Assembly (NCBI RefSeq): GCF_032191835.1
Contig: NC_083234.1
Location: 47,802,001-47,866,000, forward strand
Length of the DNA: 64,000 nucleotides
Direction of reading: 5' to 3'
From: Heteronotia binoei
Lineage: Eukaryota
Part shown: positions 233 to 58,160 of the stretch, piece after piece
Layout of the letters: each line of letters begins with the position of its first letter
Position numbering within the stretch: the first letter of the stretch is position 1
Notes under the pieces: model-generated
The model's database searches: none
Seen by the model: only the letters and a program-made list of their open reading frames with translations
What the model was told of the DNA's origin: nothing
Made by a program: the position numbers and the translations under genes

Positions 233-244
233 ATGAAGTTCTTG
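233..244 (+). CDS. GKN3: GKN3-like exon 1 (MKFL)
   Basis: aaaATGAAGTTCTTG|gtaagt; 12-nt coding first exon as in the other three genes. Confidence 0.75.
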
Positions 245-14874: not shown

Positions 14875-14957
14875 TTACAGGTTTATACGTCCACAGATTG
14901 AAATGCCCAAAATGCCAAGGATACCTGCTTTGGCACATCCTCCAGCACCCACTGTAC
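14875..14957 (-). CDS. GKN2: GKN2 exon 6
   Basis: catctag|GTACAGTG...CTGTAA on the minus strand. Confidence 0.93.
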
Positions 14958-16058
14958 CTAGATGTGAAACAGAAAATATAAATTGGTTACTCATACATGC
15001 ACAAATGCAAACACACTCCAAACTCAAATAGTTTAAGCTATTGTTTCAATATAGACCAAACTTTCTTCCATATAGGTAGACGTGGAAAAAAGCAAAAAGA
15101 CATTGGAAGGAAATACATGGAGAAATGCAGAATATATGAAAATTTAAATTCCCCATGGAAGCCAAAAATATGCTACTAGGTATATTGCCTAATAATTTGC
15201 CAAAAAATTGGAAGAGATATTCAAATACATGGTGACAGTGGCTAGAACGATCTATGCAGCAAAATGGAAAGTAGACCTTTATCCAAGCTTAGAAATAGGG
15301 AAAAATAAACTTGCCCAATATGCAGTGATGGTGAAATTAACAACTTTGAGAAACAGATCAGTTATGAAATCTGAGGAGAGATGGAGTATGTACTATGCAA
15401 ATAGAAATCAAATTTGGAAGAGCAGTAGTCTAAAATAATGTATACAATTGTATTGCAATGAAGAAGCAGAATGAAAATCAGCTCTAAATGTAATATGTTG
15501 AATATGAATGTGTATAAGGAGGCAGGTTTTGAAGAGAAACATTTTTTATTTTCTGCTATAAGATATATCTGGATAGCCTGGATGTGCCAAGATCTCGTGC
15601 CAAGATTTCATCAGATCTTGGAAGCTAAGCAGGACCTTGGAAGCTAAGCAACCCTGACAAATACTTGGAAGGGAGACCTTCTTGAAATACCAGGGCTAGG
15701 AGGCAGAGGCAGGATGTATCAAGCCACTTCTCTGAACATCCTCCATGTCCCAGTAAGGAATGCCAGAGTCACCATGACTTCCAGGCATGCATGCGTGCGT
15801 GCGTGCACACACACACACACACACACATGCACAAATACCCCCAGAAGATATACAATAGTCCTCCCTTCTGTATTTTTGTTATATTACCTAATTGCCAAAA
15901 GTAATAGCAACTGTGAGTATGCAGAAATGGCAAAACGTGTATTACTAAGTACACAGCAATGGTGAAATTAATAATTCAGTTGAAAAATACATTAAGTATA
16001 AAATTCAAAATGTAAAATATTGAATATAAATGTATCCCAATAGAAGTCAGTTTTATAT

Positions 16059-16105
<47 letters not shown>

Positions 16106-22100: not shown

Positions 22101-22199
22101 AGAGACAATCCACAAGTATTACAGAGACAATCCACAAAATACATTTTTGTTGTTGTTAAAAGAAAGGAATGTATCAAATATACTCACAAGCCTGGTCAT
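14875..22199 (-). CDS. GKN2: Gastrokine-2, 182 aa, six exons: complement(join(14875..14957,17920..18073,19062..19172,19687..19818,20706..20762,22188..22199))
   Basis: Spliced 549-nt ORF: [23 protein letters not shown]-...TVTIDNEN...[27 protein letters not shown]...[19 protein letters not shown]...[16 protein letters not shown]...[27 protein letters not shown]. Closely matches human GKN2 motifs ([39 protein letters not shown]). Minus strand, head-to-head with GKN1 as in mammals. Confidence 0.95.
15030..15450 (+). mobile_element. L1/Tx1-like LINE ORF2 3' fragment
   Basis: [15 protein letters not shown]-like motif typical of L1-clade ORF2 C-termini; degenerate. A related fragment lies at about 15830-16020. 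Confidence 0.5.
15571..15789 (+). mobile_element. 5S rRNA-derived SINE with two internal micro-duplications
   Basis: gatcttggaagctaagcagg...tacttggaagggagacc (5S A/C boxes); gtgccaagat and ttggaagctaagca each occur twice. Confidence 0.7.
16057..17560 (-). mobile_element. L2-clade LINE, 5'-truncated, in GKN2 intron 5
   Basis: RT motifs [31 protein letters not shown] and LHWLP in two overlapping ORFs (one frameshift); 3' UTR ending gccgccctgagcc...gggcgggatataa with a (TAAA)n tail at 16057-16106. Confidence 0.93.
17920..18073 (-). CDS. GKN2: GKN2 exon 5
   Basis: tctttcag|ATGCTG...GAAA|gtgagt; 154 nt. Confidence 0.94.
18595..18676 (+). mobile_element. Short L2 3' end with (TAAA)n tail
   Basis: gccaccctgagcc...gggagggcgggatataaata...aaataaataaataaa. 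Confidence 0.75.
19062..19172 (-). CDS. GKN2: GKN2 exon 4
   Basis: tgacag|GGATAC...AAACAG|gtaact; 111 nt. Confidence 0.94.
19687..19818 (-). CDS. GKN2: GKN2 exon 3
   Basis: ttcttag|GTCTAC...AAACAT|gtaagt; 132 nt. Confidence 0.94.
20706..20762 (-). CDS. GKN2: GKN2 exon 2 (signal peptide)
   Basis: cttttccag|CTAATA...TTTCAG|gtaag; 57 nt. Confidence 0.88.
22188..22199 (-). CDS. GKN2: GKN2 exon 1 (MTRL)
   Basis: aaaaATGACCAGGCTT|gtgagt, with a TATA box about 70 nt upstream. Confidence 0.8.
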
Positions 22200-28244: not shown

Positions 28245-28256
28245 ATGAAGCTGATT
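28245..28256 (+). CDS. GKN1: GKN1 exon 1 (MKLI)
   Basis: caaaATGAAGCTGATT|gtgagt. Confidence 0.82.
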
Positions 28257-31200
28257 GTGAGTATGCTTTTTCAAAAATTTCTTTTCAAAATCCTGGAACA
28301 TTTGGACTGTAGCCATTTTTTAAAGTTTTCAAACAGAGGGAAATTAATTTTGTAAAAAAAAAAAATCTGGAAGGTTCCTTAAAACCCACAGTACTTTGCT
28401 CAAGGAATAGTATTTTTAGAGTCACCATTTGGCTTTTGGGGATGATTTCCCCTTTAACTACTGGCTGGTTCACTATCTGTGGCAGTCAGATGGACTCATC
28501 TGTAAGGAGACATTACTTTAAACAGTCACATGGAAACTGAAATCTCTGTGACTGAATCAAGGCAATGTATTAATCACTAAACTGCAGTGCCATGTGGTGA
28601 CTGAATGCTCCCTTAAGACGTAATCTTTGCAGGGCACAGCCACCAAACATTAAGGGAGAAACTGAGGTTTCTTTGTTTATTTCAGGCTCAAACTGAAAAC
28701 CTTGTTTCCTGGCCTATAAACAGTCAACGTACCTATTAAAACTTTTACTTAAAAATAATTTGATCATTCTGTATCTGATAAAATATTATTAAATAGACGC
28801 ACAAAACACTGCCATACTCCATAGAATTTTATCCTGCATATATGCCTACCTAATTTGATTTCAAGAAAACGGGTTAAATTTCCAAGCTTTTTATCTCAGG
28901 GGAAAATGGATTTCACTGAATTCCAAATATAAGAGATGCAGGGATGATGGGGTGAGCTAGCTTATATAGATGGTATTACATTAGGCCAACACATTCCTTT
29001 TCTGAAATTTCATTTGTTTTCTCTAAAGGTGCGATATGATGCACTTCTGAGCATGTTCCACCAGACATTATATTCACAGTAGAGGGTTTCTCCCCTCCCC
29101 TAAGCATCAAATTAACTTCGTGGCTATGTTCTATGTTGAGAGGAGAGCTAGACTCCCAGAAGACCAACCTTTTATAATTCAGTATATATAAACAATACAT
29201 TATTTGGCCTGCTTGTTTGATTTGAAGAAAGAATAACTTTTACAAGAAACCTGGAATGGGGCGGGGGAAATCTATCAGCAAGATCAAGCAAGTCTTGTAC
29301 ATCTATAAATTGCATAAGCAAAACTGCAAAGGATACACTATGCCTCATAACAAAGCCATCTGTTCCCCGTAGCTTCTTTTTGGATAGGGACTTCTATATC
29401 TCCTTTAGCTTCCTAGGAGGCTGCTGTCATTTCCAATGTACTAATTGCTTGAGTAAATACAAGCTGCTTGAGTCTACTCATTGAACCCAGGGCTTAGTGG
29501 AATGCTGAGACACACAAAACAGATTTAAATTTGTTTTAAACTAATTGCATTACTATGCCTGCCCTAGGGTTGCCAATCCCCAGGTGGGGGCAGGGGATCC
29601 CCCAGTTTAGAGGCTCTCCCCCCACTTCAGGGTCATCAGAAAGCGGGGGGGAGGGGAGGGAAATGTCTGCTGGGAACTCTATTATTCCCTATAGAGATTT
29701 ATTCCCATAGAAAATCATGGAGAATTGGTATCTGGGGCTCGGGGGGGGCTGTTTTTTAGGGTAGTGGCACCAATTTTTCAGTATAGTGTCTAGTGCCTCT
29801 CCCCAAAATACCCCCCAAGTTTCAAAAAGATTGGACCAGGGGGTCCAATTCTATGAGCCCCAAAAGAAGGTGCCCCTATCCATTATTTCCTATGGAAGGA
29901 AGGCATTGAAAAGGTCGTCCCTTTAAATGTGATGGCCAGAACTCCCTTTGGAGTTCAATGATGCTTGTCACAGCCTTGATCTTGGCTCTACCCCAATGTC
30001 TCCTGGCTCCACCCCCAAAGTCCCCAGATATTTCTTGAATTGGACTTGGCAACCCTAGCCTGCCCCAAAGAACCTCAAGAAATGTTGACTTGCAAGGGAA
30101 GTTGGACTTCATAAATTTCATAAAGCCCTAGCTCTATACAGAACTACATTCCCTCATAACTTCAGCTGGGAGTCATGTTGTACAAGTTTCAGACTTGTAC
30201 AACAAGTTCTCAATAAGTAGTGCAAGGGCTATATGTTTTCCGCTAAATAGATCACATTGCTTTTTGCCTTCTTCCCTGCCAACTACATGGTTTGCTTCCT
30301 CTGGTTCTAAAATACTGGTTAGTAGAAGTTTTCCAGAAAAAGTAAACATAATGGAGAACTGGAAAGCCATGGGATTGTCAAAGGGATTCTGAATAGCCTG
30401 AAATTTGTCAAAATTGTCAAAAGTCTGTTTGAGGCAGAAGCTCAGTTCATGCTCCACATGTCCATATATGCATTACAGATTGAGTACAAAGAAGCTAGTG
30501 TGGACCTGGTGCGAGTATTCCATTGCATGTATGCCCATTGGAGGGTTGCAACTAGCGATAGTTCCCTGGTGCATATGCAACAAGTACTGAGACTGTGAAA
30601 TAGGTTAGTCATGGGTATTCTTAAGTCACAATTGAGCAACCCAGTAATGAATTTGAGCAAAAACCTACTGATTGCAGTGGGCCAGATTATTTTGGATTGT
30701 GGTTTTAAATCTATACAGTGCAAAGTGACCCAAGTACACCACCAGCAAATATCTGCATATAAGTATGAATTATGGTATTTTTGAAGGATGCAAATTCCCA
30801 TTTTGAAACTATATGAAAGGATGAACATTTGAACCATTTGAAGAATCCCCACCTCCTTTTTCCGCCTATCCAAAATAATTTCTTGTACAATATATGCTTG
30901 GGTCTATTCATCCTCATAAAATATTGAGAATAACTTTATTTGAATGAGACAATCTATTCAATTCAATGCTGCCATTCTTCTGAAATTCATTTCAGATTCT
31001 GAGTGCTGCTCTTCTGGGAGTTTTTCTGGCCCCAATCTTGGCCAGTAATGTAAGTACTGTGACAATTTACAGTTATTGCTTTCATACTGGCATTTCACAT
31101 TGTGCTTTGTTATTCAGTAGAATTTTGATAGTATATCTCCCTTATCTTACATTCTAATAGTCAAGTGTGGCCCAATCTGCAGATATCAAAATCCACAGAT

Positions 31201-34101
31201 TGGGGTCACACTGACTGTAAACAAACAGTTCTATAAACTTTGGGGGACCCCCAGATTTGCAAAAATATCTGAAAACTTTAAACCAGGGGTGTCAAACATG
31301 TGGCCCAGTGATGGCAGTGTCTGGGAGCCACTCTTTCTGGGCCTGGACCTAGGTGCAACAGCAGCAAAGTCCAGGAACTGCTCTGGGTCTGGGCTTGGTG
31401 ATGGCAGACTCCAGAAGCTGCTCTGGGCCCAGAGGTGGCTGCAGAGTCTTGGAACTATGCCAGGTTCGCTGACACTGGTGAGGAGGCCTCCTCTTTTACC
31501 CTTTCAATTCCACAGAGGTCAGTAGACTTAGAAGGGTGTAACCGTTAGAACTGCATTGTATAACTATTTTTAAAAACTCTTTCTTGGGAGATCTGGAATG
31601 CTGAATTCATGACTTTATCTTTTTTTTTTTGTCTTGTCTATTTTCCATCCAAGAATGTCAATGTAAATAACCAGGGAAATAGAGGAGGAAATTCCCACCA
31701 GTCCGTGAGTATCGATCACCAAAAGCAGGTGGTGAATGTTGACAATAACAACGGATGGCATTCATGGAACACCATTTGGGATTATGGCAATGTAAGGCAC
31801 CTGTGTGCACTTTTATTCCTTTATTTTACATATGATTGGGTTGGTATTGTTTCAAATAAATTTGTACTAATGGATTCTCATATACAATTATAAATTAAGG
31901 CTGACATCTTCAGCACATTCCTCTGAAAGTAGCTAGACTGTCTTCTGTGCAAATATATTTGCTTGTGTATAGACAATGGCAGTGACTCATTCACAATACT
32001 AACTTATTATAATGTCTAGTGTCTATATAGTATTCAAAACTTGTATTGCCTCAGTGATCCTTACAAGAGCATTGCAAAGTAGGCAACTATTATTTCCCCC
32101 CTATAGCAGTGTAAGCTACAATGCAGTGTATTCTGAGAGAATTTTTTGCCCTGGTTTATTGGGGAGGGGCCAAAGCTCAGTGGTAGGGTTTGTGAGGCTG
32201 AATGCCAAATGAGGCTGAATGAGGCTGAATACCACCACTTAAGTGATTTTCAGGTTGCAGAGCTGGAAACAACCTCACTTTATCCTGGTCCCTGGAGAAC
32301 CAGCCAAGCAGAGTACACATCGCAGAGCAAGATGGACCAGTGGTCTCTCTGAATCCAAAATGCATCTATGTACATTAAGTCAGACAAGACAAAGAACAGA
32401 AATTATATAGAAAATGAGCAATTTATTTCCTAAATTCCTATGCTATTTGTAACATGTGGCTGATTACCATATTGTTTGAACAGGGCTACACAGCTACCCG
32501 TATATTTACCAAGAAAGCCTGCGTTATTGCACCTCTGAATAAACAGATAATGCCCGATGTGACTGTCCTTCCACAAACCATCAAGGAAAAGCAGGTATGG
32601 TAAAAAGGATGCTTGATGCATGCTTTTTGGTAACAGTGGAGGCATTTGTTTTGTTTAAGTGAAGGAAAGTTTGGTGTAGTGGTTAAGTGTGCAGACTCTT
32701 ATCTGGGAGAACTGGGTTTGATTCTCCACTCCCCCACTTGCAGCTGCTGGAATGGCCTTGGATCAGCCATAGCTCTTGCAAGAGTTGTCCTTGAAAGGGC
32801 AGCTTTTGAGAGCACTCTCTCAGCCCCACCCACCTCACAGAGTGTCTGTTGTGGGAGAGGAAGATAAAGAATATTGTGAGCCGCTCTGAAACTCTGAGAT
32901 TCAGAATGGAGGGTGGAATATAAATCTCATATCATCGTCATCATCATATTCAGTACGGTAGGCTAAGAATAGTCAAAAAGAACATATAAAAAAGAATAGA
33001 CAAATTCTGATCTTTCAGTTGGCTACTAGTCATTTCCTCATGAATCCTCCATATAGAATTGCTGAACACTAATGGAGTCATCATTTTCATACCCTTCCAG
33101 GGATATTCTCCCTGGGATGTCTGACAGATTTAAACAGCAGGTTTTTATGGCAGACATACAGAAATGTAATATTAAATTGACCACTAGAGGGAACAAAACA
33201 TGCAGAAAAGAAAAAAAATGAAGCAATAGGAACTCAAAAGCAATGAAAATGAGAATGCGGAAGAGCCTATGAGCTGTAAAATCTGAATTTTCCCACTTAC
33301 ACAGTAAAGACTTTGTTGTGATCATTCCCAAATCTCTGGAGCAAAACAGGTTTGAGAAAGATAGGAGAAAAGCTGGTGAAATGCCCCAAAGTGCTCAGTG
33401 TGGATAACCCATGCAGAAATTGGCCAAGACTTAGTCCAGATTACAGTAAAGACAAAAAAACAAGGCCTCCCTGGCCTGGTTCCATAACTATATCCACTGA
33501 TCATATCAGAGCCAGTCTTTCAATGCTGTATCACTATTCTTTTTTTTTCTTTGTTGCATTTAGAAGAGTGGTTCTCAAGGACCTCCAGACAAGCAACTGA
33601 CTTACACTATCTCTCGGAATAAAGTCACTGACCTGAGCACATATGGAAAGAGTATTGAAAATCTGTGCAGAGGGATTCCCACTTACCTTGCCCATGAAGT
33701 TAAAGGTGAGCATAACTTTTGAGCAACTTTCATAAACCTGTATGTTTTTGCAGAATGCAAACAAGAGTGTTTCTTTGTTAGGAACATGCAGTGGTTTTGC
33801 CCTGCTGCCCACCTTACACTTACAATAGTGTAATTTATGAGGAATGAGTCCTACAAAAGCGGGGGGGCGGGGAGCCACAAGAGTTATTGGTACAAAATCA
33901 ACTTGGTTTGTGTAGATATACTCATAAGCTGCAGGGCCCTAAAAATGACATTGCCCTGTTTCTTTCCAAGTGTCAGCCTGACAATGCTACTTCTTTTCTT
34001 TTTCAGCACCAAGTTTTCTCTATGTCTCTGGATCATGTTTCAACGCTAACATCCTTTGCATCCTTGGAATAAGCTTCTGTGGAGAAACTTGGGGATACTG
34101 A
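28245..34101 (+). CDS. GKN1: Gastrokine-1, 183 aa, six exons: join(28245..28256,30996..31049,31654..31791,32484..32594,33564..33705,34007..34101)
   Basis: Spliced 552-nt ORF: MKLI-ILSAALLGVFLAPILASN-NVNVNN...VNVDNNNGWHSWNTIWDYGN-GYTATRIFTKKACVI...KEKQ-KSGSQGPPDKQLTY...IENLCRGIPTYLAHEVK-APSFLYVSGSCFNANILCILGISFCGETWGY*. Matches human GKN1 motifs LLGVFLAP, NVDNNNGWDSWNSIWDYGN, CRGIPTY and ISFCG. Confidence 0.95.
29565..30057. mobile_element. hAT MITE (about 490 bp) in GKN1 intron 1
   Basis: TIRs TAGGGTTGCCAA / TTGGCAACCCTA; perfect 8-bp TSD GCCTGCCC. Confidence 0.9.
30996..31049 (+). CDS. GKN1: GKN1 exon 2 (signal peptide)
   Basis: atttcag|ATTCTG...AGTAAT|gtaagt; 54 nt. Confidence 0.92.
31654..31791 (+). 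CDS. GKN1: GKN1 exon 3
   Basis: catccaag|AATGTC...GGCAAT|gtaagg; 138 nt. Confidence 0.94.
32484..32594 (+). CDS. GKN1: GKN1 exon 4
   Basis: gaacag|GGCTAC...AAGCAG|gtatgg; 111 nt. Confidence 0.93.
32661..32947 (+). mobile_element. Squam3-like tRNA-derived SINE with L2-type tail
   Basis: gtttggtgtagtggttaagtg (A box)...gggtttgattc (B box)...tgtgagccgctctga...(TCA)n tail. Confidence 0.8.
33564..33705 (+). CDS. GKN1: GKN1 exon 5
   Basis: atttag|AAGAGT...AAAG|gtgag; 142 nt. Confidence 0.94.
34007..34101 (+). CDS. GKN1: GKN1 exon 6
   Basis: ttttcag|CACCA...TACTGA; 95 nt. Confidence 0.92.
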
Positions 34102-37929: not shown

Positions 37930-38098
37930 NNNNNNNNNNNNNNNNNNNNNNNNNNNNNNNNNNNNNNNNNNNNNNNNNNNNNNNNNNNNNNNNNNNNNNN
38001 NNNNNNNNNNNNNNNNNNNNNNNNNNNNNNNNNNNNNNNNNNNNNNNNNNNNNNNNNNNNNNNNNNNNNNNNNNNNNNNNNNNNNNNNNNNNNNNNNN
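37930..38098. other. Assembly gap (169 N)
   Basis: Run of N. Confidence 1.
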
Positions 38099-39721: not shown

Positions 39722-39755
39722 ATTTGCATGACTCTTATGCGTAGAGGTATATAAA
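39722..39755 (+). promoter_or_regulatory. Promoter of the fourth gastrokine: octamer ATTTGCAT plus TATATAAA
   Basis: ATTTGCAT at 39722-39729, TATATAAA at 39748-39755, TTATCA (GATA) at 39704; ATG at 39827. Confidence 0.65.
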
Positions 39756-39826
39756 GGAGAAGGAGAAGAAGACATGGATAAATCCCTTCATCTTGATCTT
39801 TCATTTGTGCTTGGTCCGGTATCAAA

Positions 39827-39838
39827 ATGAAAACCCTT
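39827..39838 (+). CDS. Fourth gastrokine exon 1 (MKTL)
   Basis: caaaATGAAAACCCTT|gtaagt. Confidence 0.82.
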
Positions 39839-42381
39839 GTAAGTATATGTATAAATTTCAAACTTTAACATGAGGTAGGACATAGAAGCATAGTGCAGAG
39901 AGTTGCAAGTGGAAATGAGGCTTGAAGATCAGATGAAGTAAGGAGGTTAGGCAAGGAGCTGCTACAATGATCCTAGAGTGCTTTAATATGCATATAGTTG
40001 CATTTCATGTGCATATGTTTCATGTTCCAAGAAGAGGAACTGTAGGTGTGTCTTTCCTTCTTTTATGTCCTGTTATCTTTTTCCAGTCTGTGAGGCATAG
40101 GCCATCCAAGCAGAATGACTATATGAGCCTTGCCATTAAGTTGTTATTTTTGACCAATCATTCCCAAACTATCTACCGATCTGTAGAACATTTTTTCATC
40201 ATTGATATATCTACTGAGGAACCCCTGAGCATCAGACCTGAAGCCACATCCATTGCAAAGGGTTTGGCCAAATGTTGCAGTCAGGCCTCATTCGTTTCTC
40301 TGTCACCCTCCACTAACCAATAAAATTTCCTGGGATGCCCCTCAAACTCTCTCTCAACAGGACAATGACAAAGAAACTGGTAAGTGTGGGCATTGTTCAA
40401 GATGGGGGATCCGATTAAACTCTGAGGAGTCCCAGTGTTTCCCAGAATACAGATGCAAAATTAGGGCGGAGTACACCTATGAAGGACATATAGGTTGGGG
40501 CCAAGGCACCTCACTGTCACTGCTTCTGTCTCCTGTTGTTAAAGGTTGTTCAGTATGTCCCTAATGGAGTTTCCAGCACATGGTCACAGAACTCTTTTCA
40601 GGACCAGAGCATGTAGATTTTATTATTAGCTTATCTATGGCATGACAGCTACAATTAATCACTTGTGCATCTCTTCAGCCAACTGAATCCATCTATGCAG
40701 TGGGGTAGCTATGGAGCTGATAGTGCAGTGCTATACAGACTAGACCCTTCTCAGTCCATTGAAGTCTTAGAAGGGTGTATATCTGTTTAGCATTGCTTTG
40801 TGAATGTTCATCAAGAAAGAATAACTGCTTTCTTGAACCACCATAGCCTTTCTAGGTGTCCCCTTGAATTGTAATATTTTGTTTTATGTCCTATCTCAGA
40901 CAACTGCAAACCAGGTAATTAAAATGGAGTTATTCTAGAACTAACCAAGAGCAGGTGTCCTTTAAGTTAACTAAGGGAGACCATGTCAAGAAGTAACAAT
41001 ATGCTTCCATCATTCACCTCTCCTCCATTTTATCCTCACAACAATCCTGTGAGATAAATTAGGCTGAGTGTATATGACTGACCCAGTGCCACCCAGCAAG
41101 TTTCCACAGTAGAGATTTCAACCTGGTCTCCCAGATCCTCGTCTGACACTGAAACAACCACAAAATGAAAAATCTGTTAGCTACAGTATTCTGTTTAAAT
41201 TGTTCATCACAGTTGATTGTAGGGAAAATGGAATGTGAGGTTGGGGATCCCATCCAACTGCATAGGATTTAAGGACATGTAAAACAGACCTGAATATGAC
41301 TGTTTTGTTTTCATTCTGTCTTCAAGATTCTGGCTGTTGTACTGGTGGAGCTTCTAACAGTCTCAGCCTCAGAGAGCAATGTAAGTAGCCAAGCAAACTT
41401 TGCTCCTTTACTCAGTCCTCAGCCCTGCTTCCTCTTTGTGCATGTCTTATTTTAACAATAGAGAGGAGTCAGATGCACTCCGTGTTCTCTTGCCACAGCT
41501 GCCTGCAATAGTTAGAGATTCTTCAGAGCTTGCAGTGTGTGTTGGGATCAGACTACATTTCAGCCCCATCACTATTGCAATGAATTCATTAATTAGCCTT
41601 AGGCAAAATATTGGCTCTCAGCCCTCCATCTGAAATATGGAGTTCATAATGTTGCCATACCTTACAAGGTTCTTACAAGGCTTCTAAGATCAACGATGGG
41701 ATTCCATTTCAGTATTTAGGGAAAAGATCATAATATAAATAGAATGATTATTTTTGCATTAAATCCAGCATTTGGGCTATATGGTCTGTTCTCATTTTTC
41801 TAATGTTCTTCTCGTGGCTTGCATTTGGGAACATCCTAAGAGCAAGGCTGACCCAAGACTTGGTGCCTAAGACAGAAGTTCAACTATTGCATGACCTCAC
41901 TGAAGTGAATGAGAGAGACCAATGAGCATTGTGGTATTCTTGCTCTCATTCCCTTCAGTGAAGTTTACACTCGAAAAGCATTCTTGGGGGCTGTGTTCCA
42001 TCCATTGTTCAATCTCTAGTGAAAAGGATCTTGAGAGATGGACCAAATTATCTGACTTGATATAAATTAGTGTCATACCACAGATGTGGTCAATGGACTT
42101 GGTCTGCTGGTTTCTGCTGCCAATTCACAGTGCGCAAAGCTGCCACATGATATCGCTGGCTCACCTTGCCTTCCAAAGTATAATTTGACATGGATTTTTT
42201 GTTTTTTAGGCTATACAGCTCATAAACAAGGGAAATGACGGAGGAACTGTCTATCAGACAGTGAACATCAACAATAATATTAATGTTGCTTCCTTTAACA
42301 CCTACTTTGGAACACACTCAACCAATGCAATCGTTGACTACAATAATGTAAGTATCAAGCCAAGTTATTTGGTTAAATTGC

Positions 42382-42419
<38 letters not shown>

Positions 42420-45400
42420 GGTGGGAAAGATAATGCTGGAATCTCCCTTTAGAGATTCCAGTTTGGTGTAGTGGTTAAGTGTGTAGACTCTTATCTGGGA
42501 GAACTAGGTTTGATTCCCCACTCCTCCACTTGCACCTACTAGCATGGCCTTGGGTCAGTCATAGCTCTGGCAGAGGTTGTCCTTGAAAGGGCAGCTGCTG
42601 TGAGAGCCCTTTCCAGCCCCACCCACCTCACAGGGTGTCTGTTGTGGGGGAGGAAGGTAAAGGAGAATGTGAGCCACTCTGAGACTCTTCGGAGTGGAGG
42701 GTGGGATATAAATCCAATATCTTCTTCTTCTTCTCTGAAGCATCCATTTAATTCCTCTGAAGAGCAAGGCTGTTAGTACCAAAAGACAGTCTCTGATAGA
42801 GAGGTGGGGTTAGATCAAAACCATATTTCCTGCTAACAAAAGGCACTTCCATCGGCAGAACTTGACTTTCCTGCCTCTCTCTCATACTGTAGACCCTTGT
42901 TCTCCCTGAAATGCTGGTCCAGGGGGACAGGGGACACTCACAAATGGCATGGGGGCAAATCAGGGGTCTGCAACAGGAAGAAGGAATTTGTAGAAATTAT
43001 ACCTCTCCTTCCATTAGTGGAAAATCTAGACTAGATCCAGCCCAGCATCTCCATTCTTTTAAAGTTCATGTAACTTTATGAGGTCAGCCCTCTCAAACTA
43101 ACAGAGAAATAGAAATGATGTAGAAATAAAGTGCCCTAAAGAGGAAAGGAAATACCATCAGCAGTGCCAGCTCTAGGTTTCTGGGGCAAAACTCTTACAA
43201 TATGAGCTTGTACCCTGCCCATACAGTGTGCCTATTCCTCATAGCATCAGTTGAGGACAAACAAGAGAGTGTTGCTCCGCCTACTTAGCTCACTGCTACC
43301 AGCCACCATCCCAGAATGGAACAAATATATGCTGTGCAGCAGCAAAGAGCACCTGTAGATGCAGAGGGCTCCAGATGATGGACCTATGCTGGGATATTTA
43401 TGGGTTCCCAAATGTGCCACACACTGACACTACAAATAGATCAAAAGGCAGTAATACTCCAGATGTAATGTCCTGCCCAGATATTTACAGTTACTTATTT
43501 ATATATCCCCATCAGGGTAAATGTTTTATAGAATAGCATAAGCAAACGGCAAAGCTCCTTGCCCCAAGGAGCTTACAGTCTAGGAACATGATCCAGCCCT
43601 TCCGCTCCATGTGCTGACGTGGGCCTTTTAAATTTTCTGTTTAGCTATGAGCATAACAGGATGAGGAAAAGTAATATAGGAAAAGAGTTGTTGTTTTAAT
43701 GTCTGGTGTAATTTTAGGTTGTTTTATTGTTGTTTATTGTATGTGTTGTAATAAATACTATACAAATTAAGTCAGTCAGTAAATAAACGAGGGGAAGAGG
43801 AAGAAGAGCTGGATTGAACCGTAAGTTTTGTGTGTGATGGCGACAATGGAAGGATAGGAGACAGGGGTAAATGAAAGCAAATGCAGAATCAAGCTTTTCT
43901 TCAGTTTGGGGTAAGGATTTAGAAAGAGTATACTTCCTGACTTTCTATGTAAAGCACTAGCATTGTCTGAAAGCTTTATTTAATAAAATTATCAATGAAG
44001 AATTTAAACTTGGAGATTTTTCCCGTCCAGAAGTTAGCAACATTTGGGAGAATCTACAGCACAGAACAGAACTGAATGGTGACAAACTTGTTTCTAACAT
44101 TTGCCCTTATGTTTTGCAGGGGTTGATTGTTTACCAGATGCCTTACAGGCGGCTCTGTATTGTGTCCCGGATGAATCGAAGCACCTTTCCAAGCATATCA
44201 GAGCTTCAGAACCTAATCCATGAGGTACTCAGTGAAGATACAGAATCAGGGCTGGCCCAAGACATGTGGGTGCCTGAGGAAGAAAAACAGCGCCCCTTGA
44301 CCACTAATTCCCCTGGAGTACAATCCAGCGGAGAGGCCTCCTGTATAAGATTCGTTGAGAGTTATTAGGATTATTCAAGAGACCTGTACATCTTCCCAAC
44401 ACTAGATGCCCTGGAGGAACTAGAACTGAAACTTTCTGTGCCTAGATAATATAGATAAGACCCAGAATAACAGTTAACTCAAAATTTGACTGGAATTTTG
44501 AGGCAAATATGGAGGGATTTTGCTTAGCTGAATGTCCACCTATCTATCACATTTGTATCTCACCCATAAAATGTTAAGAGAAGCAAAAGGAATTTCAGTA
44601 TGACATGAAATTTCTCGGGTGTGTTTGTGTTGCTCTAGGGCAACAATACTGTGGGGGAGTTGCCTCACTGCCCTGCCTATACCAGCCACCTGAAGGGAAG
44701 AAATGCCAGAAACCAACAAGAGTAGGTGGAAGATGGCTCTTGCAAACTGGTTGTTTAATCGCCATTGAAACCATCAACAGTTTGTCTGAAGCATAGTTAA
44801 TGATGCAAAGTGACTTGTTTTCTATTTCTAATTTTTTTTCTGCCACAAAGGAGAATCCAGCACTGCACCCCCTCAACAGAAACTATGGTATCTCTCGCAA
44901 GATAGTCAGAAATCTGTATCAGCTTGGAATGCCTGCCCAAGCAATGTGTGGAGGTTTCACTACCTACTGGGCCACAGAATTCCAACGTGAGTTTTTTCAA
45001 AATTCACCGTGTTCCTAAGAGCAGGGGTAGGATCACACCTATTCATTGATTCCACAGCAGGGGACTTGTAGGGTTGCCAGGTCTGTGTTGGGAAATACCT
45101 TGAGACTTTGGGGGTGGGTCCAGGAGAGGGTGGGGTCTGGGGAGGGGCCTCATCATGGTACAATGCCATAAAGTCCACCCTTCAAAGCAGGGTGAACTGA
45201 TCTCCGTCAGCTGGAGAGCAGTTGTATATAGGGTTGCCATGTCAAGAAATATCTGGGGACTTTGGGGGTGGAGCCAAGAGATTTGGGAGTAGAGCCGGGA
45301 GCAAGGGTGTGATAAGCAGGGGTCATTTTGTAGAAAAATAGGTGGTGGAGCTCATCCAGGGATTGTTAAGCAGCTGCACCTCCTATTCAATGGACAAGAT

Positions 45401-48151
45401 AGGTAGGTGGGGAGGAAGAGAGGGAACCCTCAGAAAGGTTCAGGAGCTGTGCTCCTGTGAGCTCCTGCTGAACTCAAGGCCTGGTTACAAGCATGATTGA
45501 ACTCCAAAGGGAGTTCTGGCAATCACATTTAAAGGGACCAAATGGCTTTTAAGTGCCTTCCCTCTATTGGAAATAATGCAGGATAGAGACACCTTTTGGG
45601 GGCTTATAGAATTGAACCCCCTGGCCCAATCTTTGTGAAACTTGGGAGGGGTGTTTTGAGGAAAGGCACCAGATGCAATGCTGAAAAGTTGGTGCCTCTA
45701 CCTCAGAAACAGCCACTCAGAGTCCCAGATACCCACAGATCAATTTTCCATTATACCTGATGGAATCAGTCTCCATAGGGTATAATGGAGTGCCCAGCAG
45801 AAATCCCCCCCCCCCCAGCTTTCTGATAACCCTGGAGCAGGGGAAGAGCCTCCAAACTGGAAGATCCCCTGCCCCCAACTACGGATTAGGCAAACTAGAA
45901 ACCACAGTGTACAGATTGATAAGAAAACAACAAAACACTATGTAAATTACATGCTTCAAGTAAATACTTTACATTCTTTACTAATGCATCACTTCTTATG
46001 GCTAGCATCAAATGCTCTTAGCCCAATACTGAAACTTAAAGAGTACACAGTCCTCAAACAAAGGCTCTATTGCAAATAGGATCCAAACTGGATGATGCAA
46101 ACAATAGGTACCAAATCCTGCTGTCTTTATATGTCTCTTGCTGGTAGATGCAGATAGTACGGCTACCTCAGGATTGATTCAAGGATATACAGTACCATCT
46201 GTGTCTACCAGCAAGAGGGATATAAAGACAGCAGGATTTGGTACCTATTGTTTGCAGCTCCAGTTTGGATCCTATTTGCAACAGAGCCTTTATTTGAGGA
46301 CTGTGGACTCTAAGTTTCAGTATTGGGTTAAGAACATTTGATGCTAGTCATAATAAGTGATGCATGAGTAAAGAATGTAAAGCATTTACCTGAAGCATGT
46401 AATTTACAGTGTTTTGTTGTTTTCTTACCCAACTGGGGATTGGCAGTCCTAAAGGGAAAGGTCTCCAGGCCCCACTTGGAGACTGGCAACCATACTTCAA
46501 GTAAGAGCTTTGTAAGTGGATTGATATCTGGGTCCCTACGCGCTTTTGGGGGTTCTCAGTTGGATGCATCTCTCACTATTTCCTAGACAGAGTCCCAGGT
46601 ATGGTCGTTTGTTCCACTCTGTTTCTCTTAATGGCATTTGAAGTCTTTCTTTACCTATTGGGGGGGATGATCAGCCCACTATCAGAACATAAGAGAAGCC
46701 ATGTTGGATCAGGCCAATGGCCATCCAGTCCAACACTCTGTGTCACACAATGGCCAAAAAACCCAGGTGCCATCAGGAGGTCCATTAGTGGGACCAGGAT
46801 ACTAGAAGCCCTCCCACTGTCCCCCCCCCCCAAGCACCAACAATACAGAGCATCGCTGCTCCAGACAAAGAGTTTCAACAATACGCTGTGACTAATAGCC
46901 ACTGATGAATCTCTACTCCATATGTTTATCCAATCCCCTTTTGAAGCTATCTACGCTCATAGCTGCCACCACCTCCTATGGCAGTGAATTTCATGTGTTA
47001 ATCACCCTTTGGGTGAAGAAGTGCTTCCTTTTATCTGTTCAAACCTGACTGCTCAGCAATTTCATTGAATGTCCACAAGTTCTTGTAATGTGAGAAAGGG
47101 AGAAAAGTACTTCTTTCTCTGCCTCCTCTATCCCATGCATAATCTTGTAAACCTCTATCATTTCATCCCTCAGTTGATGTTTCTCCAAGCTAAAGAGCCC
47201 CAAGCGTTTTAACCTTTCTTCATAAGAAAAGTGTGCCAACCCTTTAATCATTCTAGTTTGCTTTTTCTGCACTTTTTCCGATGCTATAATCTCTTTTTGA
47301 GGTGTGATAAGAATTGTACACAGTATTCCAAGTGAGGCTGCACCATTGATTTATACAGGGACATTATGATACTGGCTGATTGTTTTCAATTCCCTTCCTA
47401 ATAATTCCCAGCATAGCATTGGCCTCTTTCATTGCAGTCGCACACTATTTGCCACTTAGGGTTGCCAAGTCCCCCATGGCCTCTGGTGGTATAGAGTTCC
47501 CCCCAAATTGCTAGAGCATCCAGGAAAACCATAGAGTTTTCCCAGAAAATCCCAAAGTGGCTGGCACACTACGTTGCTGCGTGTGATGATGTCACTTCTG
47601 GGTGATGTCATCACACAGGCGACATCATGTGGGGATCCCCCCAGCGGCCCGCTGTGGGCCAGGGGGATGGGGACCCACAAAGCAGGAGAACCCCCGCCCC
47701 ACCCGAGAACTTGGCAGCCCTACTGCCATTGCAACCTGGCAGGCTGATGTTCCTGGCAAATAATTCAGCAGTTTGAAGGCTAAATATGACTCCTGGGTTG
47801 TAATTCTTCCACTTCTGTTTTCAATGGCCACTTCATAAGGTACATAAGATGCAGTGGAGAAAAGGGGAAGAAAAAGGCCTAGGTGCACAGATCCTCAGAC
47901 AGACACCGCAATATTGGCAAATCCTCTCAATAAACCATTTGGGGTTATTAAAATTGTAATTTCCCATCAGAACAATATTACAGGAACACTGTCTTTTGGC
48001 AGTACAGCACAGTACACACGTTGGTGAATGCCTGCCTAACTTGCATTTTCTTTAATCTACAGAACCAGTAGCAGTTGGAGGCAAAGCCTGTGCAGATGTG
48101 CACCTTCTTATTCTCAATGTGAACCTATGCGGAGGCATTTCCCTCTTCTAA
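39827..48151 (+). CDS. Fourth, divergent gastrokine-like BRICHOS protein, 177 aa, six exons: join(39827..39838,41327..41380,42210..42347,44120..44224,44851..44986,48063..48151)
   Basis: Spliced 534-nt ORF with no stop: MKTL-ILAVVLVELLTVSASESN-AIQLINKGNDGGTVYQTVNINNNINVASFNTYFGTHSTNAIVDYNN-GLIVYQMPYRRLCIVSRMNRSTFPSISELQNLIHE-ENPALHPLNRNYGISRKIVRNLYQLGMPAQAMCGGFTTYWATEFQ-QPVAVGGKACADVHLLILNVNLCGGISLF*. Same intron phases as the other three genes; all four canonical Cys and the BRICHOS DY motif are kept. Confidence 0.88.
41327..41380 (+). CDS. Fourth gastrokine exon 2
   Basis: cttcaag|ATTCTG...AGCAAT|gtaagt; 54 nt. Confidence 0.85.
42210..42347 (+). CDS. Fourth gastrokine exon 3
   Basis: ttttag|GCTATA...AATAAT|gtaagt; 138 nt. 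Confidence 0.92.
42385..42416. repeat. (CT)n microsatellite
   Basis: About 16 CT units. Confidence 0.9.
42451..42734 (+). mobile_element. Squam3-like SINE
   Basis: Same head and body as 32661; (TCT)n tail. Confidence 0.82.
44120..44224 (+). CDS. Fourth gastrokine exon 4
   Basis: ttgcag|GGGTTG...CATGAG|gtactc; 105 nt. The donor is non-optimal, so the 3' boundary is less certain. Confidence 0.8.
44851..44986 (+). CDS. Fourth gastrokine exon 5
   Basis: cacaaag|GAGAAT...CCAAC|gtgagt; 136 nt. Confidence 0.88.
45069..45897. mobile_element. Three-layer nest of hAT-type MITEs in intron 5 of the fourth gastrokine
   Basis: A short MITE from 45069; an inverted long MITE 45229-45897; an inner element 45317-45483 flanked by gtgataag/gttacaag. 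Confidence 0.65.
46685..47445 (-). mobile_element. CR1 LINE 3' fragment, degenerate
   Basis: aacataagagaagccatgttggatcagg 3' end; ORF2 remnant MIKGLAHFSYEERLKRLGLFSLEK. Confidence 0.88.
47457..47722. mobile_element. hAT MITE with a distinct interior
   Basis: tagggttgccaag...ttggcagcccta; flanks ttgccact/ctgccatt. Confidence 0.65.
48063..48151 (+). CDS. Fourth gastrokine exon 6
   Basis: ctacag|AACCA...TTCTAA; 89 nt. Confidence 0.88.
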
Positions 48152-48879
48152 CCAGGAAAAGATGTGTGTCTCCCAGTTTAAACAGGAAAAGAAGTCTATC
48201 TCTCAGCTTAACTCTATTTGACATTCTCCAATCCAAAGCTACACACCTTGTGTGACCCATCAAAGCAAATACAGCCCTCCACCCATGTTTTGTGGCCTGA
48301 CAAGTACTAGACAACCTCCATTTGTACAGTCTCAAAGAGGCAGCAAAGAGAGGCAGTTCATCAACCCCCCAGGGAACTGCCATATCAATCAAGTGGACTA
48401 TATTTGGACTGAAGGGTCACAATCTGTGGAAATCTGACCTACTCCAGCAATCTCTCATTCAATTGTCAAATGATGGCCCATAGAAGCAGTAAAAATTTAA
48501 GGACCAAGTCTGTAGAAAAATGCATACAAGAGTGGGCTGTTGGTAAGCTGTTGCCCACTTCTAGCTATTTAACAAATGTCAAAACCAACACTAACCATCT
48601 CCCGTTTAGAGAGAGGAGGGAATCCAGCTACTACCAGGAGCCTTTTCAGGGTGGTGCTTTCATTGCTTAGGTATTTTTGGTCACATCTTTGGTCATAATT
48701 GGAAGGGTGAATGAGAAAGTTGTGAGTTTGGTGATGTTCCTTTATTGAACAATTTAGTGATTTTCCCCGGATCCCTTAGAGCCAAAAAGCCTGGGCTATA
48801 GTTTGGTTTCACTTCCTCTCCTGGTTGGCTGTGTAGTTCTTGTTCAAGCAGAGGTGAGGAAAGGCACTGCTTCTGCTCC

Positions 48880-48885
48880 AATAAA
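48880..48885 (+). terminator. Candidate polyadenylation signal of the fourth gastrokine
   Basis: First AATAAA seen after the stop, about 730 nt downstream. Confidence 0.35.
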
Positions 48886-57179: not shown

Positions 57180-58160
57180 ATTGCCGGATGTATTTCCTGG
57201 CAGCAGTTTTGTTTTGTTTTTTAAACGAGACGGTCCTCGCGTTTCTTACGGATGAATTACGCTAAACGGTTTCGTAAATACTTCAACCATTAGATGGCAG
57301 CCTTGGGACTCGCTTAGTAAGAAAGAAGCCTGGAGCCCACTACCCGCAATAACAACAGTAATGATGGAAGGGGGGGGGGGGGAGAATGAGCCTTCCCACA
57401 TTCTCTGAAATCTGGGACAAAGCAAAAAATCGTCCGGAAACTGCTTATTGCATTGCAGACAGAAGGGATGTTTCCTTCTCGGGGCTGTGAGCAAAAGAGC
57501 GAGAAGGCTCTGAAATAGGAAAAAAAGAGCGAGGGACGGAGAGAGCGGCAGGCAGCCCTACTTGTGCATCTTGAAATCCGAAACCAAGCGAAGTCTTGCA
57601 ACTTGGGGAGGACAACTTTCCGCGAGGGGCCGATGCGAAGCCCTTGCTTGGCTTTGCAGAAGACGGCGTTCAGATAAAGGGAGCCTGGGGAGAAAGTCGA
57701 CAACGCTCGGGCTGGGATCTCACCATGGCCCCGGCGAAAGCTCCGCGCTGGGCTCTGCGCTGGGTCTTCTTGGCTGCCACGGCTCTGGTCGCTTGTGATG
57801 GGCAGGGCGGCAGGAGCCGGGAGAACGGCGGCTCTGCCTGCTATGGAGGCTTCGACCTCTACTTCATCTTGGACAAGTGAGTGCGGGGCGGGGGGTGGAG
57901 AGCGGAGCGGGCAGTCTCTGGGGGACCAGGATGGCTGATGAGTCTTGCAGATTTTGGAGCTGAAAGGGAGGCCGGCGGCTCCTCTCTCCCTCCTCGCCCA
58001 GACTTTTGTCTCGGTCGGTCCCTTCTTTGCAATTCTCCCCCCCCACCCCCCCACCCGGGCTCTTCTCTTTTCCAGCCCTTTAAATGCTGTGCTCTGTTCG
58101 ACCCTTGGCCTTAGACATTTCGTGGGGGGGAAAGGGAGAGCTTTGTTAGCGCGCTTTGGC
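57180..58160. promoter_or_regulatory. CpG-rich island over the ANTXR1 promoter and exon 1
   Basis: Visibly dense CpG and GC content against CpG-depleted flanks; ETS-like CCGGAAA near 57434. Confidence 0.7.
57725..57876 (+). CDS. ANTXR1: Anthrax toxin receptor 1 (TEM8), exon 1; the gene continues beyond the window
   Basis: caccATGG Kozak context; signal peptide, then [26 protein letters not shown] matching human [25 protein letters not shown]; phase-2 donor AA|gtgagt; syntenic with the GKN cluster. Confidence 0.96.

What the first reader, a model, noticed from the sequence alone, without database searches (positions are those of the whole stretch)
39827..48151. A fourth, deeply diverged gastrokine gene between GKN1 and ANTXR1
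Seen: a complete six-exon gene with TATA box, AG/GT splice sites, family intron phases, a 177-aa ORF, the DY motif and four canonical Cys. Known: human and mouse have only GKN1-3, with GKN1 next to ANTXR1. By manual count of exon 3 it matches GKN1 at 17/46, GKN2 at 15/44 and GKN3 at 13/46 residues, so it is not a recent copy of any of them, and I could not align its introns or promoter with theirs. Inference: an ancient paralogue kept in squamates and lost in mammals, making a four-member secreted BRICHOS system. Automated annotation may already label it gastrokine-like; I cannot check whether it has been described.
Basis: partly seen in the sequence, partly recalled or inferred. Interest (0 to 1): 0.85.

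Follow-up and report, generated by a model that had tools for sequence, protein, structure and literature searches.

The report
Fourth, ancient gastrokine gene (GKN4-like)
The gecko has an intact fourth gastrokine gene between GKN1 and ANTXR1; frogs, salamanders, caecilians, turtles and lizards carry it at the same spot, no mammal protein and no exons in two snakes were found, and databases list it only as "gastrokine-1/2/3-like".

Summary
A six-exon, 177-aa BRICHOS gene lies at 39827-48151 (+). All its introns are GT-AG, and a TATA box sits 79 nt upstream of the ATG. The protein is identical to NCBI's model "gastrokine-1-like [Heteronotia binoei]". The window also holds intact GKN3-like, GKN2 and GKN1 genes and ANTXR1 exon 1, in the expected order.

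The gene is not a gecko duplicate. Orthologues occur in lizards, an amphisbaenian, turtles, caecilians, salamanders and frogs. They form one clade (100/99 support) whose branching follows the species tree. This clade lies outside a GKN1+GKN2+GKN3 clade (99/91). Exon sizes are conserved, and the order GKN1 -> this gene -> ANTXR1 holds in Paroedura, Sceloporus, a sea turtle and Xenopus tropicalis.

dN/dS is 0.21 between Heteronotia and Paroedura (CI 0.11-0.38), lower than GKN1 in the same pair (0.42). No mammal, bird or crocodilian protein joined the clade, and two snakes show no exon of it downstream of GKN1.

Expression could not be tested. I found no paper naming a fourth gastrokine. Verdict: a real, conserved, unnamed fourth subfamily of a known family. 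Interest is moderate.

The parts
39748..39757 (+). TATA box (TATATAAAGG), 79 nt upstream of the ATG
   Evidence: Read directly. The same gTATATAAAGG element sits at a similar distance in Paroedura and Sceloporus. Related elements occur in the turtle (ATATATAAGG) and Xenopus (CATATAAATAAGG) orthologues.
39827..39838 (+). Exon 1 coding part (MKTL), followed by a GT donor
   Evidence: A 12-nt first coding exon is found in all five orthologues mapped and in the window's GKN1, GKN2 and GKN3.
41327..41380 (+). Exon 2, 54 nt: hydrophobic core and end of the signal peptide
   Evidence: It is the most hydrophobic AG..GT-bounded segment in the intron region. It is 54 nt in all orthologues.
42210..42347 (+). 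Exon 3, 138 nt: N-terminal beta strands up to the conserved D65-Y66
   Evidence: It is 138 nt in all orthologues.
44120..44224 (+). Exon 4, 105 nt: first BRICHOS Cys (C81) and the clade-specific Y73, P76 and Y77
44851..44986 (+). Exon 5, 136 nt, ends in phase 1: second BRICHOS Cys (C136) and the TYWATE motif with clade-specific W143
48063..48151 (+). Exon 6 coding part with the stop codon: hydrophobic C-terminal hairpin region with C158 and C171
   Evidence: AF2 predicts strands 156-163 and 166-173.
48880..48885 (+). First AATAAA after the stop, a candidate polyadenylation signal about 730 nt downstream
   Evidence: Pattern scan only. Not verified by RNA.
233..7439 (+). Context: GKN3-type gene, six exons, 181 aa, intact. 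Intron 3 has a GC donor.
   Evidence: Gene model. It groups with mammalian gastrokine-3-like proteins at 99/93.
14875..22199 (-). Context: GKN2 gene, six exons, 182 aa, intact
   Evidence: Gene model. It groups with mammalian GKN2 at 100/100.
28245..34101 (+). Context: GKN1 gene, six exons, 183 aa, intact
   Evidence: Gene model. It groups with mammalian, crocodile, turtle and bird GKN1 at 99/95.
57725..57877 (+). Context: ANTXR1 exon 1 coding part (approximate ends), about 9.6 kb downstream of the stop codon
   Evidence: An ORF ends with the [13 protein letters not shown] start of the VWA domain. The gene downstream of the orthologues carries Pfam VWA, Anth_Ig and Ant_C.

Best explanation
This is a functional, single-copy gene for a secreted gastrokine-type BRICHOS protein. 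It belongs to a fourth orthology group (in effect 'GKN4') that is separate from GKN1, GKN2 and GKN3. The group arose by tandem duplication in the BMP10-ANTXR1 gastrokine cluster no later than the common ancestor of amphibians and amniotes. It has kept its position as the last gastrokine before ANTXR1 and its six-exon structure. It survives in amphibians, turtles, lizards and amphisbaenians. It has gone from colubroid snakes and, as far as annotated proteins show, from mammals. Birds and crocodilians are unresolved.

Inferred mode of action, by homology only: a signal peptide (about residues 1-20) sends the protein into the secretory pathway. The BRICHOS domain (57-143) carries the family's two conserved Cys, C81 and C136. 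It holds the protein's own hydrophobic C-terminal beta-hairpin (about 156-173, which carries C158 and C171). The protein is then released, most likely from gastric surface mucous cells into the mucus layer, as for GKN1-3. All four mature Cys fall at family-conserved positions, and the extra Cys that the window's own GKN2 carries in exon 3 is absent. A GKN2-style disulfide heterodimer with TFF1 is therefore not expected.
For: Shown:
- The ORF and splice sites are intact and the protein equals an NCBI model.
- Pfam BRICHOS matches at 1.3e-18.
- The AF2 model has pLDDT 83.4. Its best fold matches are gastrokines 1, 2 and 3 at TM 0.74-0.82, with no preference for one of them.
- There are 47 further D-type proteins at E 1e-30 to 1e-114 (48 hits with the query's own protein), all from squamates, turtles or amphibians.
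- In the ML tree the clade has 100/99 support. Its internal order is caecilians, then salamanders, then frogs, with turtles plus squamates as the other half. GKN1+2+3 form a separate 99/91 clade.
- Amphibians that have this gene also have other gastrokines in the same genome, for example Spea, Geotrypetes and Ambystoma.
- The order GKN1-type gene -> this gene -> ANTXR1 on one strand holds in turtle, Xenopus, Paroedura and Sceloporus.
- Exon sizes are 12/54/138/105-111/127-139/89-92 in all five mapped orthologues.
- dN/dS is 0.21 (bootstrap CI 0.11-0.38) for Heteronotia-Paroedura and 0.13-0.28 for other squamate pairs. GKN1 in the same pair gives 0.42.
- 51 residues are invariant across 17 squamate and turtle sequences.
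- Seven residues are clade-diagnostic: Q25, Y37, Y73, P76, Y77, L111 and W143.
- Grouping this clade with mammalian GKN1 is rejected (AU p 0.02).

From the literature: the BRICHOS domain chaperones a C-terminal aggregation-prone hairpin, and Asp and two Cys are conserved (PMC10182729, PMC9627735). GKN2 forms a heterodimer with TFF1 (PMC6929139).
Against: - No RNA evidence was obtained. The only RNA runs that shared words with the gene covered intronic repeats, with zero depth on all four exons laid. No run held exon 6 plus the UTR. The tissues of those runs are unknown, so this says nothing either way.
- The tissue, secretion, disulfide pattern and chaperone function are inferred from relatives and were not tested.
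- The exact branching is not settled. A tree that joins this clade with amniote GKN1 is only marginally worse (AU p 0.052). The alignment has only 181 columns.
- Absence in mammals, birds and crocodilians is shown at the level of annotated proteins plus short flanks only.
Confidence: 0.85

Rival explanations
1. It is an old sister lineage of GKN1 only. One duplication of a GKN1-like gene next to ANTXR1 gave both GKN1 and this gene, so it is not a lineage that split before GKN1, GKN2 and GKN3 separated.
For: The AU test does not clearly reject this clade plus amniote GKN1 as one group (delta lnL 31, p 0.052). The gene is GKN1's direct neighbour on the same strand. GKN1 is the gecko paralogue with the highest identity to it, at 30%.
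Against: The free ML tree puts GKN1 with GKN3 and GKN2 at 99/91, excluding this clade. Even under this rival the split predates the amphibian-amniote divergence, because amphibian members sit inside the clade at 100/99. It would therefore still be a fourth orthology group.
Confidence: 0.12
2. It is the true positional orthologue of mammalian GKN1, which is also the gene next to ANTXR1. On this view the sauropsid 'GKN1' is the extra copy, and nothing was lost in mammals.
For: In mammals GKN1 is the gastrokine adjacent to ANTXR1 (PMC12372087). NCBI calls the Xenopus tropicalis member 'gastrokine-1'.
Against: Mammalian GKN1 (sheep, grey whale) groups with crocodile, turtle, bird and squamate GKN1 at 99/95. 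Forcing mammalian GKN1 together with this clade costs 43.7 lnL units (AU p 0.02). The clade-diagnostic residues occur in at most 7% of GKN1-3 sequences.
Confidence: 0.02
3. It is a gecko- or squamate-specific, fast-evolving duplicate, or a decaying or unexpressed copy.
For: Identity to GKN1-3 is low. No RNA support was obtained here.
Against: Orthologues occur in turtles and all three amphibian orders with conserved synteny and exon structure. The ORF is intact in every mapped species. dN/dS is 0.13-0.28 among squamates, and no bootstrap replicate reached 1.
Confidence: 0.01

Closest known systems
Gastrokine-1 (GKN1 / AMP-18 / CA11)
   Same: Same cluster and strand. Same six-exon layout with a 12-nt first coding exon and a phase-1 last intron. 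It has a signal peptide, a BRICHOS domain and a hydrophobic Cys-bracketed C-terminus. The predicted fold matches at TM 0.74-0.79.
   Different: Only 30% identity to the gecko's own GKN1. It lacks GKN1's NNNGW.SWN..WDY block. It has clade-specific Y73, P76, Y77 and W143. It is a separate clade. It is under tighter constraint than GKN1 in geckos, with omega 0.21 against 0.42.
Gastrokine-2 (GKN2 / TFIZ1 / blottin)
   Same: Same family and fold, with the best Foldseek hits at TM 0.79-0.82.
   Different: 28% identity and the opposite strand in the cluster. GKN2 has a longer exon 5. The window's GKN2 carries an extra Cys in exon 3 (GGTCSS). The TFF1-GKN2 heterodimer is described in PMC6929139. This protein has only the four family-conserved Cys.
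Gastrokine-3 (GKN3)
   Same: Same family and fold. GKN3 is a precedent for lineage-specific loss of a gastrokine: PMC12372087 reports Gkn2 and Gkn3 lost in monotremes, and a reference title it cites discusses GKN3 pseudogenicity in humans. NCBI even names the Xenopus laevis member of this clade 'gastrokine-3'.
   Different: 27.5% identity. The real GKN3 clade (marsupial, rodent, turtle and gecko gene A) is separate at 99/93. It lies at the other end of the cluster.
Other BRICHOS families (proSP-C, BRICD5, ITM2A/B/C)
   Same: BRICHOS domain with the conserved Asp and two Cys. There is a weak structural match to proSP-C BRICHOS 2YAD and to ITM2B/C and BRICD5 models.
   Different: These are type II membrane proteins, not signal-peptide secreted proteins. 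They serve as the outgroup in the tree, and gastrokines including this clade are monophyletic at 100/100.

Membership tests
BRICHOS superfamily | Pfam PF04089 match above the curated cut-off | tested here: met
   67.4 bits against a cut-off of 25, E 1.3e-18, residues 57-143, covering profile positions 2-91 of 91.
BRICHOS superfamily | Conserved Asp and two conserved Cys in the domain (PMC10182729, PMC9627735) | tested here: met
   D65, C81 and C136 are present. The two Cys are conserved in >=90% of all aligned gastrokines. D65 is >=90% conserved within the clade; one turtle has Asn, a substitution the literature also reports in GKN families.
BRICHOS superfamily | BRICHOS fold (beta sheet flanked by helices) with a C-terminal aggregation-prone hairpin | tested here: met
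   In the AF2 model (pLDDT 83.4) helices 94-102 and 125-136 flank the strands, and the C-terminal strands are 156-163 and 166-173. The match to solved 2YAD is weak (E 6.7e-3, TM by target 0.56-0.65). This is a prediction, not a solved structure.
Gastrokine family | Secreted architecture: N-terminal signal peptide rather than a transmembrane anchor, about 180 aa, with a single BRICHOS domain | tested here: inconclusive
   177 aa. A hydrophobic N-terminus (residues 5-17) is followed by small residues (SASES), and AF2 models a helix at 2-18. No signal-peptide predictor was available and secretion was not tested.
Gastrokine family | Location in the BMP10-ANTXR1 gastrokine cluster with the shared six-exon structure | tested here: met
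   It lies between GKN1 and ANTXR1 exon 1. Its exon sizes parallel those of the three neighbours.
Gastrokine family | Groups with gastrokines rather than other BRICHOS families in a phylogeny | tested here: met
   Gastrokines including this clade have 100/100 support against proSP-C-like and BRICD5 sequences. The best fold hits are GKN1, GKN2 and GKN3.
Gastrokine family | Expression in gastric mucosa | not testable with these tools
   No informative RNA run was available.
GKN1 orthology group | Clusters with mammalian GKN1 | tested here: not met
   The gecko's gene C, not this gene, groups with mammalian GKN1 at 99/95. This clade plus mammalian GKN1 is rejected at AU p 0.02. This clade plus all amniote GKN1 is borderline at p 0.052.
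GKN2 orthology group | Clusters with mammalian GKN2; extra Cys in exon 3 | tested here: not met
   Gene B is the GKN2 orthologue at 100/100. No extra Cys is present here.
GKN3 orthology group | Clusters with mammalian GKN3 | tested here: not met
   Gene A groups with marsupial and rodent gastrokine-3-like proteins at 99/93.

The most novel reading that the evidence does not exclude
The clade is the sister of GKN1+GKN2+GKN3 together. That makes it the earliest-branching and most conservative tetrapod gastrokine; gar and coelacanth gastrokines score slightly better against it than against GKN1-3. It would then have been lost independently at least twice (mammals and snakes) and perhaps more often (crocodilians, most birds). 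Those lineages would be natural knock-outs for a component of the gastric mucus-protection system that mammalian work could never see.
Probability: 0.5. Interest if true: 0.55.

Novelty: new member of a known kind. Interest (0 to 1): 0.45.

Why it matters
Gastrokine biology covers gastric mucosal protection, tumour suppression, partnership with TFF peptides and BRICHOS chaperone activity. It has been built on three mammalian genes. Recent evolutionary and BRICHOS-classification papers still count only GKN1-3 (PMC12372087, PMC9627735, PMC10182729).

A fourth group matters for four reasons:
- It is at least as old as tetrapods, and in geckos it is more constrained than GKN1.
- It changes the reconstruction of the ancestral cluster.
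- It explains the contradictory automated names (-1-like, -2-like, -3, -3-like) and warns that Xenopus 'gkn1' and 'gkn3' labels do not mean orthology to the mammalian genes.
- It gives clean loss events, such as snakes against lizards, to relate to stomach physiology.

It is an incremental addition to a known family, not a new kind of system.

Tried and rejected
1. RNA support. Three metatranscriptomic RNA runs shared 6-7% of the words of 42200-48160. When laid, their contigs covered only interspersed repeats in introns 3 and 5 (about 42399-42796 and 44986-47771), with depth 0 on exons 3-6. A second search with exon 6 plus the 3' flank listed no run. This gives no evidence either way.
2. The window's own protein could not be looked up as a locus. 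The own-genome search showed only the window's exons.
3. Crocodile GKN1 (P0049) is not on record as a gene call, so no crocodilian locus could be inspected.
4. The canary locus turned out to be a tandem array of GKN1-type BRICHOS genes away from ANTXR1. It says nothing about this gene.
5. The 10 kb downstream of grey whale GKN1 gave only noise (best E 0.07). The flank does not reach ANTXR1, so decayed mammalian exons are not excluded.
6. My second word-index protein search, with a mixed GKN1-3 profile, was swamped by mammalian GKN2 and gave few named GKN1 or GKN3 sequences. Names for key tree tips came from cluster look-ups instead.
7. Foldseek against the PDB gave no hit at E <= 0.001.
8. Literature searches for GKN4, 'gastrokine 4' and 'fourth gastrokine' found nothing relevant; the 'gkn4' hits are NAR DOIs. 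Geahlen et al. 2013 on the gastrokine locus is not held, so I could not check whether it mentions non-mammalian extra copies.
9. Papers that mention 'GKN1' in caecilian or frog stomach do not say which paralogue is meant, or matched only a DOI.
Full report
**1. What is in the window.**
The window comes from Heteronotia binoei (Bynoe's gecko), chromosome-scale contig C12. The segments are 39827-39838, 41327-41380, 42210-42347, 44120-44224, 44851-44986 and 48063-48151. Every intron starts with GT and ends with AG. Introns 1-4 are phase 0 and intron 5 is phase 1.

A TATA box (TATATAAAGG, 39748-39757) lies 79 nt upstream of the ATG. The first AATAAA after the stop is at 48880.

The protein hits Pfam BRICHOS at E 1.3e-18 over residues 57-143. 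It is 100% identical to an existing NCBI model named 'gastrokine-1-like [Heteronotia binoei]'. A six-frame search of the whole assembly finds only these exons, so the gene is single-copy.

**2. The neighbours.**
I built models for the other three gastrokines in the window:
- Gene A runs from 233 to 7439 on the + strand and encodes 181 aa.
- Gene B runs from 22199 to 14875 on the - strand and encodes 182 aa.
- Gene C runs from 28245 to 34101 on the + strand and encodes 183 aa.

All three are intact. All have the same six-exon plan, with a 12-nt first coding exon, a 54-57-nt signal exon, a 132-138-nt exon 3 and a phase-1 last intron.

ANTXR1 exon 1 lies at about 57725-57877 on the + strand. The order is therefore A(+), B(-), C(+), the candidate 'D'(+), ANTXR1(+).

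**3. Relatives.**
A word-index search with D found 16 orthologues at 52-88% identity in geckos, iguanians, a lacertid, a cordylid, a skink, an anguid, an amphisbaenian and three turtles. Among these 17 sequences, 51 residues are invariant.

An exhaustive HMM search of 1.84 billion representatives gave only five hits better than 1e-30. These were D's own cluster, a fused turtle model, a frog, a caecilian and a nine-unit bird protein. The bird units and the caecilian hit fall outside the D clade in the tree (section 4).

A third search used a squamate, turtle and frog profile. It returned 48 proteins at E <= 1e-20. All are from squamates, turtles, caecilians (Rhinatrema, Geotrypetes), salamanders (Lissotriton, Ambystoma) or frogs (Ascaphus, Bombina, Xenopus, Spea, Rana and others).

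NCBI names for these proteins are gastrokine-1-like, -2-like, -3, -3-like or -1, with no consistency. No mammal, bird, crocodilian or snake protein appears among them.

**4. Phylogeny.**
I ran a careful IQ-TREE analysis (LG+C20+F+G4 PMSF, 93 rows, 181 columns). proSP-C-like and BRICD5 proteins served as the outgroup; they were identified. The main results:
- Gastrokines are monophyletic at 100/100.
- The D clade has 31 rows and 100/99 support. It splits into turtles plus squamates (99/92) and amphibians (100/98).
- Within the amphibians, caecilians, salamanders and frogs branch as in the species tree, with Ascaphus first and Bombina next among frogs.
- A separate clade (99/91) holds GKN2 (mammals plus sauropsids, 100/100, with gene B) and GKN3 (marsupial, rodent, turtle and gecko gene A, 99/93).
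- That same clade holds GKN1 (sheep, whale, crocodile, turtle, tinamou, squamates and gene C, 99/95).

Several amphibians have both a D-type protein and other gastrokines in one genome. D is therefore a distinct locus that predates the amphibian-amniote split.

AU tests: D plus mammalian GKN1 is rejected (delta lnL 43.7, p 0.02). D plus all amniote GKN1 is borderline (delta lnL 31.2, p 0.052). So 'a fourth orthology group at least as old as tetrapods' is firm. 'Sister to GKN1-3 together' is favoured but not proven.

**5. Synteny and gene structure.**
A GKN1-type BRICHOS gene, then the D orthologue, then a gene with VWA, Anth_Ig and Ant_C domains (ANTXR1) lie on one strand in four species:
- Lepidochelys kempii
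- Xenopus tropicalis
- Paroedura picta
- Sceloporus undulatus

A fused Eretmochelys model has two GKN1-type units followed by one D-type unit, which matches that order.

Exact mapping of five orthologous proteins onto their loci gives exon sizes of 12, 54, 138, 105-111, 127-139 and 89-92 nt. The TATA element is also conserved.

**6. Selection.**

| Comparison | dN | dS | omega (NG86) | 95% bootstrap CI |
|---|---|---|---|---|
| D, Heteronotia-Paroedura | 0.059 | 0.281 | 0.21 | 0.11-0.38 |
| D, Heteronotia-Eublepharis | 0.129 | 0.466 | 0.28 | 0.17-0.43 |
| D, Heteronotia-Sceloporus | 0.193 | 1.485 | 0.13 | 0.06-0.22 |
| GKN1, Heteronotia-Paroedura | 0.103 | 0.248 | 0.42 | not computed |

No bootstrap replicate for D reached 1. 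D is therefore at least as constrained as its well-known neighbour.

**7. Losses.**
In Thamnophis elegans, GKN2(-), GKN1(+) and ANTXR1(+) are present. The 7.7-kb GKN1-ANTXR1 interval has no called gene and no D-like exon; the best tBLASTn E value is 0.03 and looks like noise.

In Crotalus adamanteus, the 10 kb after GKN1 is likewise empty of D exons. The same search on the Sceloporus interval recovers four exons at E 1e-9 to 1e-20. Snake GKN1 and GKN2 proteins are abundant in the databases, but no snake D-type protein was found. The gene is therefore lost at least in colubroid snakes.

For mammals the evidence is absence from annotated proteins and one uninformative 10-kb whale flank.

For birds, the annotated gastrokine-like arrays are GKN1-type. 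One bird locus (L008) ends just after an AG/GT-bounded 54-nt exon. Its 18 residues match turtle D signal exons at 13 of 18, and all the best matches are D-clade proteins. Birds are therefore unresolved. No crocodilian locus could be fetched.

**8. Structure and likely mechanism.**
An AF2 model built with a 46-sequence alignment has mean pLDDT 83.4 and pTM 0.76. It shows an N-terminal helix at 2-18 (the signal peptide), a beta-rich N-terminal part, helices at 94-102 and 125-136, and a C-terminal strand pair at 156-163 and 166-173.

The best structural neighbours are gastrokine-2, -3 and -1 of rat, human, mouse and pig (TM 0.74-0.82, 21-33% identity). ITM2C/B and BRICD5 follow. The only solved relative, proSP-C BRICHOS 2YAD, matches weakly.

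The literature describes BRICHOS as an intramolecular chaperone. It holds the protein's own C-terminal aggregation-prone hairpin and depends on a conserved Asp and two Cys (PMC10182729, PMC9627735). D has these residues (D65, C81, C136) plus C158 and C171 around the hydrophobic tail.

All four Cys sit at positions conserved across the family. D lacks the extra exon-3 Cys of the window's GKN2. GKN2 is reported to form a disulfide heterodimer with TFF1 (PMC6929139). I therefore infer a secreted, monomeric or non-covalently associating mucosal protein. Secretion, tissue and activity are inferences.

**9. Novelty.**
A 2025 survey of stomach genes treats the cluster as Gkn1-3 between Bmp10 and Antxr1, with some unplaced 'GKN-like' fish sequences (PMC12372087). 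BRICHOS classifications list GKN1, GKN2 and GKN3 only.

Searches for GKN4, 'gastrokine 4' and 'fourth gastrokine' found nothing. One key paper, Geahlen et al. 2013, is not in the library.

The gene models themselves are public under inconsistent names. What appears to be new is the recognition of a fourth, ancient orthology group and its pattern of loss. That makes it a new member of a known family, of moderate interest.

**10. Housekeeping.**
The N run at 37930-38098, between GKN1 and D, was left untouched.

Noticed in passing
L008:24039-24092 and L008:20357-20461 (bird assembly GCA_036370855.1): Downstream of a bird GKN1 gene there is a lone GKN1-type exon 4 (50-57% identical to crocodile and turtle GKN1). 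Further on there is an AG/GT-bounded 54-nt exon whose 18 residues match turtle signal exons of the new clade at 13/18, and all top matches are members of that clade. The locus ends 116 nt later and no gene is called there. It may be an unannotated or decaying bird orthologue.
   Followed up: partly
L014:15944-23691 (Thamnophis elegans); L015:14596-24596 (Crotalus adamanteus): Two colubroid snakes have GKN2 and GKN1 but no recognisable exon of the fourth gastrokine: Thamnophis in the whole GKN1-ANTXR1 interval, Crotalus in the 10 kb after GKN1. This is a loss within squamates.
   Followed up: yes
P0018 (Pithys albifrons, 1483 aa); L007 (Serinus canaria): Birds carry tandem arrays of GKN1-type BRICHOS units. 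One model has nine units, and a canary microchromosome has at least four adjacent BRICHOS genes. They form a long-branch clade inside sauropsid GKN1. Multi-BRICHOS GKN1 precursors are already noted in PMC9627735.
   Followed up: partly
P0146, P0147, P0148, P0264 (sea and big-headed turtles); L001:1-6903: Turtles have two GKN1-type copies upstream of the fourth gastrokine. Several turtle gene models wrongly fuse two or three neighbouring gastrokines into one protein.
   Followed up: partly
window:3785-3793: Intron 3 of the GKN3-type gene uses a GC donor (AAG|GCAAGG) rather than GT. The gene is otherwise intact, whereas a paper title cited in PMC12372087 discusses pseudogenicity of human GKN3.
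   Followed up: no
window:45934-46415: Intron 5 holds a near-perfect palindrome of about 480 nt, made of nested inverted arms of 108, 53 and 65 nt at 90-94% complementarity. It looks like a foldback or MITE-type element.
   Followed up: partly
window:42399-42796, 44986-45980, 46379-47771: Interspersed repeats in introns 3 and 5 are very abundant in contigs of three metatranscriptomic RNA runs at 90-99% identity, while the flanking exons have no coverage. These are transcribed repeat families, not evidence for this gene.
   Followed up: partly
window:51378-52628 (-): A 416-aa ORF with a reverse-transcriptase domain (Pfam RVT_1, E 1.2e-30) lies between the fourth gastrokine and ANTXR1. It is a LINE-type retroelement fragment.
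   Followed up: partly
window:8350-8425 and 42385-42416: There are two simple repeats: a (GGAA)n run after the GKN3-type gene and a (CT)n run at the start of intron 3 of the fourth gastrokine.
   Followed up: no
P0279, P0280 (Xenopus laevis, X. tropicalis): The Xenopus genes that NCBI names 'gastrokine-3' (X. laevis) and 'gastrokine-1' (X. tropicalis) belong to the fourth clade, not to mammalian GKN3 or GKN1. Results reported under those symbols in frogs should not be transferred to the mammalian genes.
   Followed up: yes
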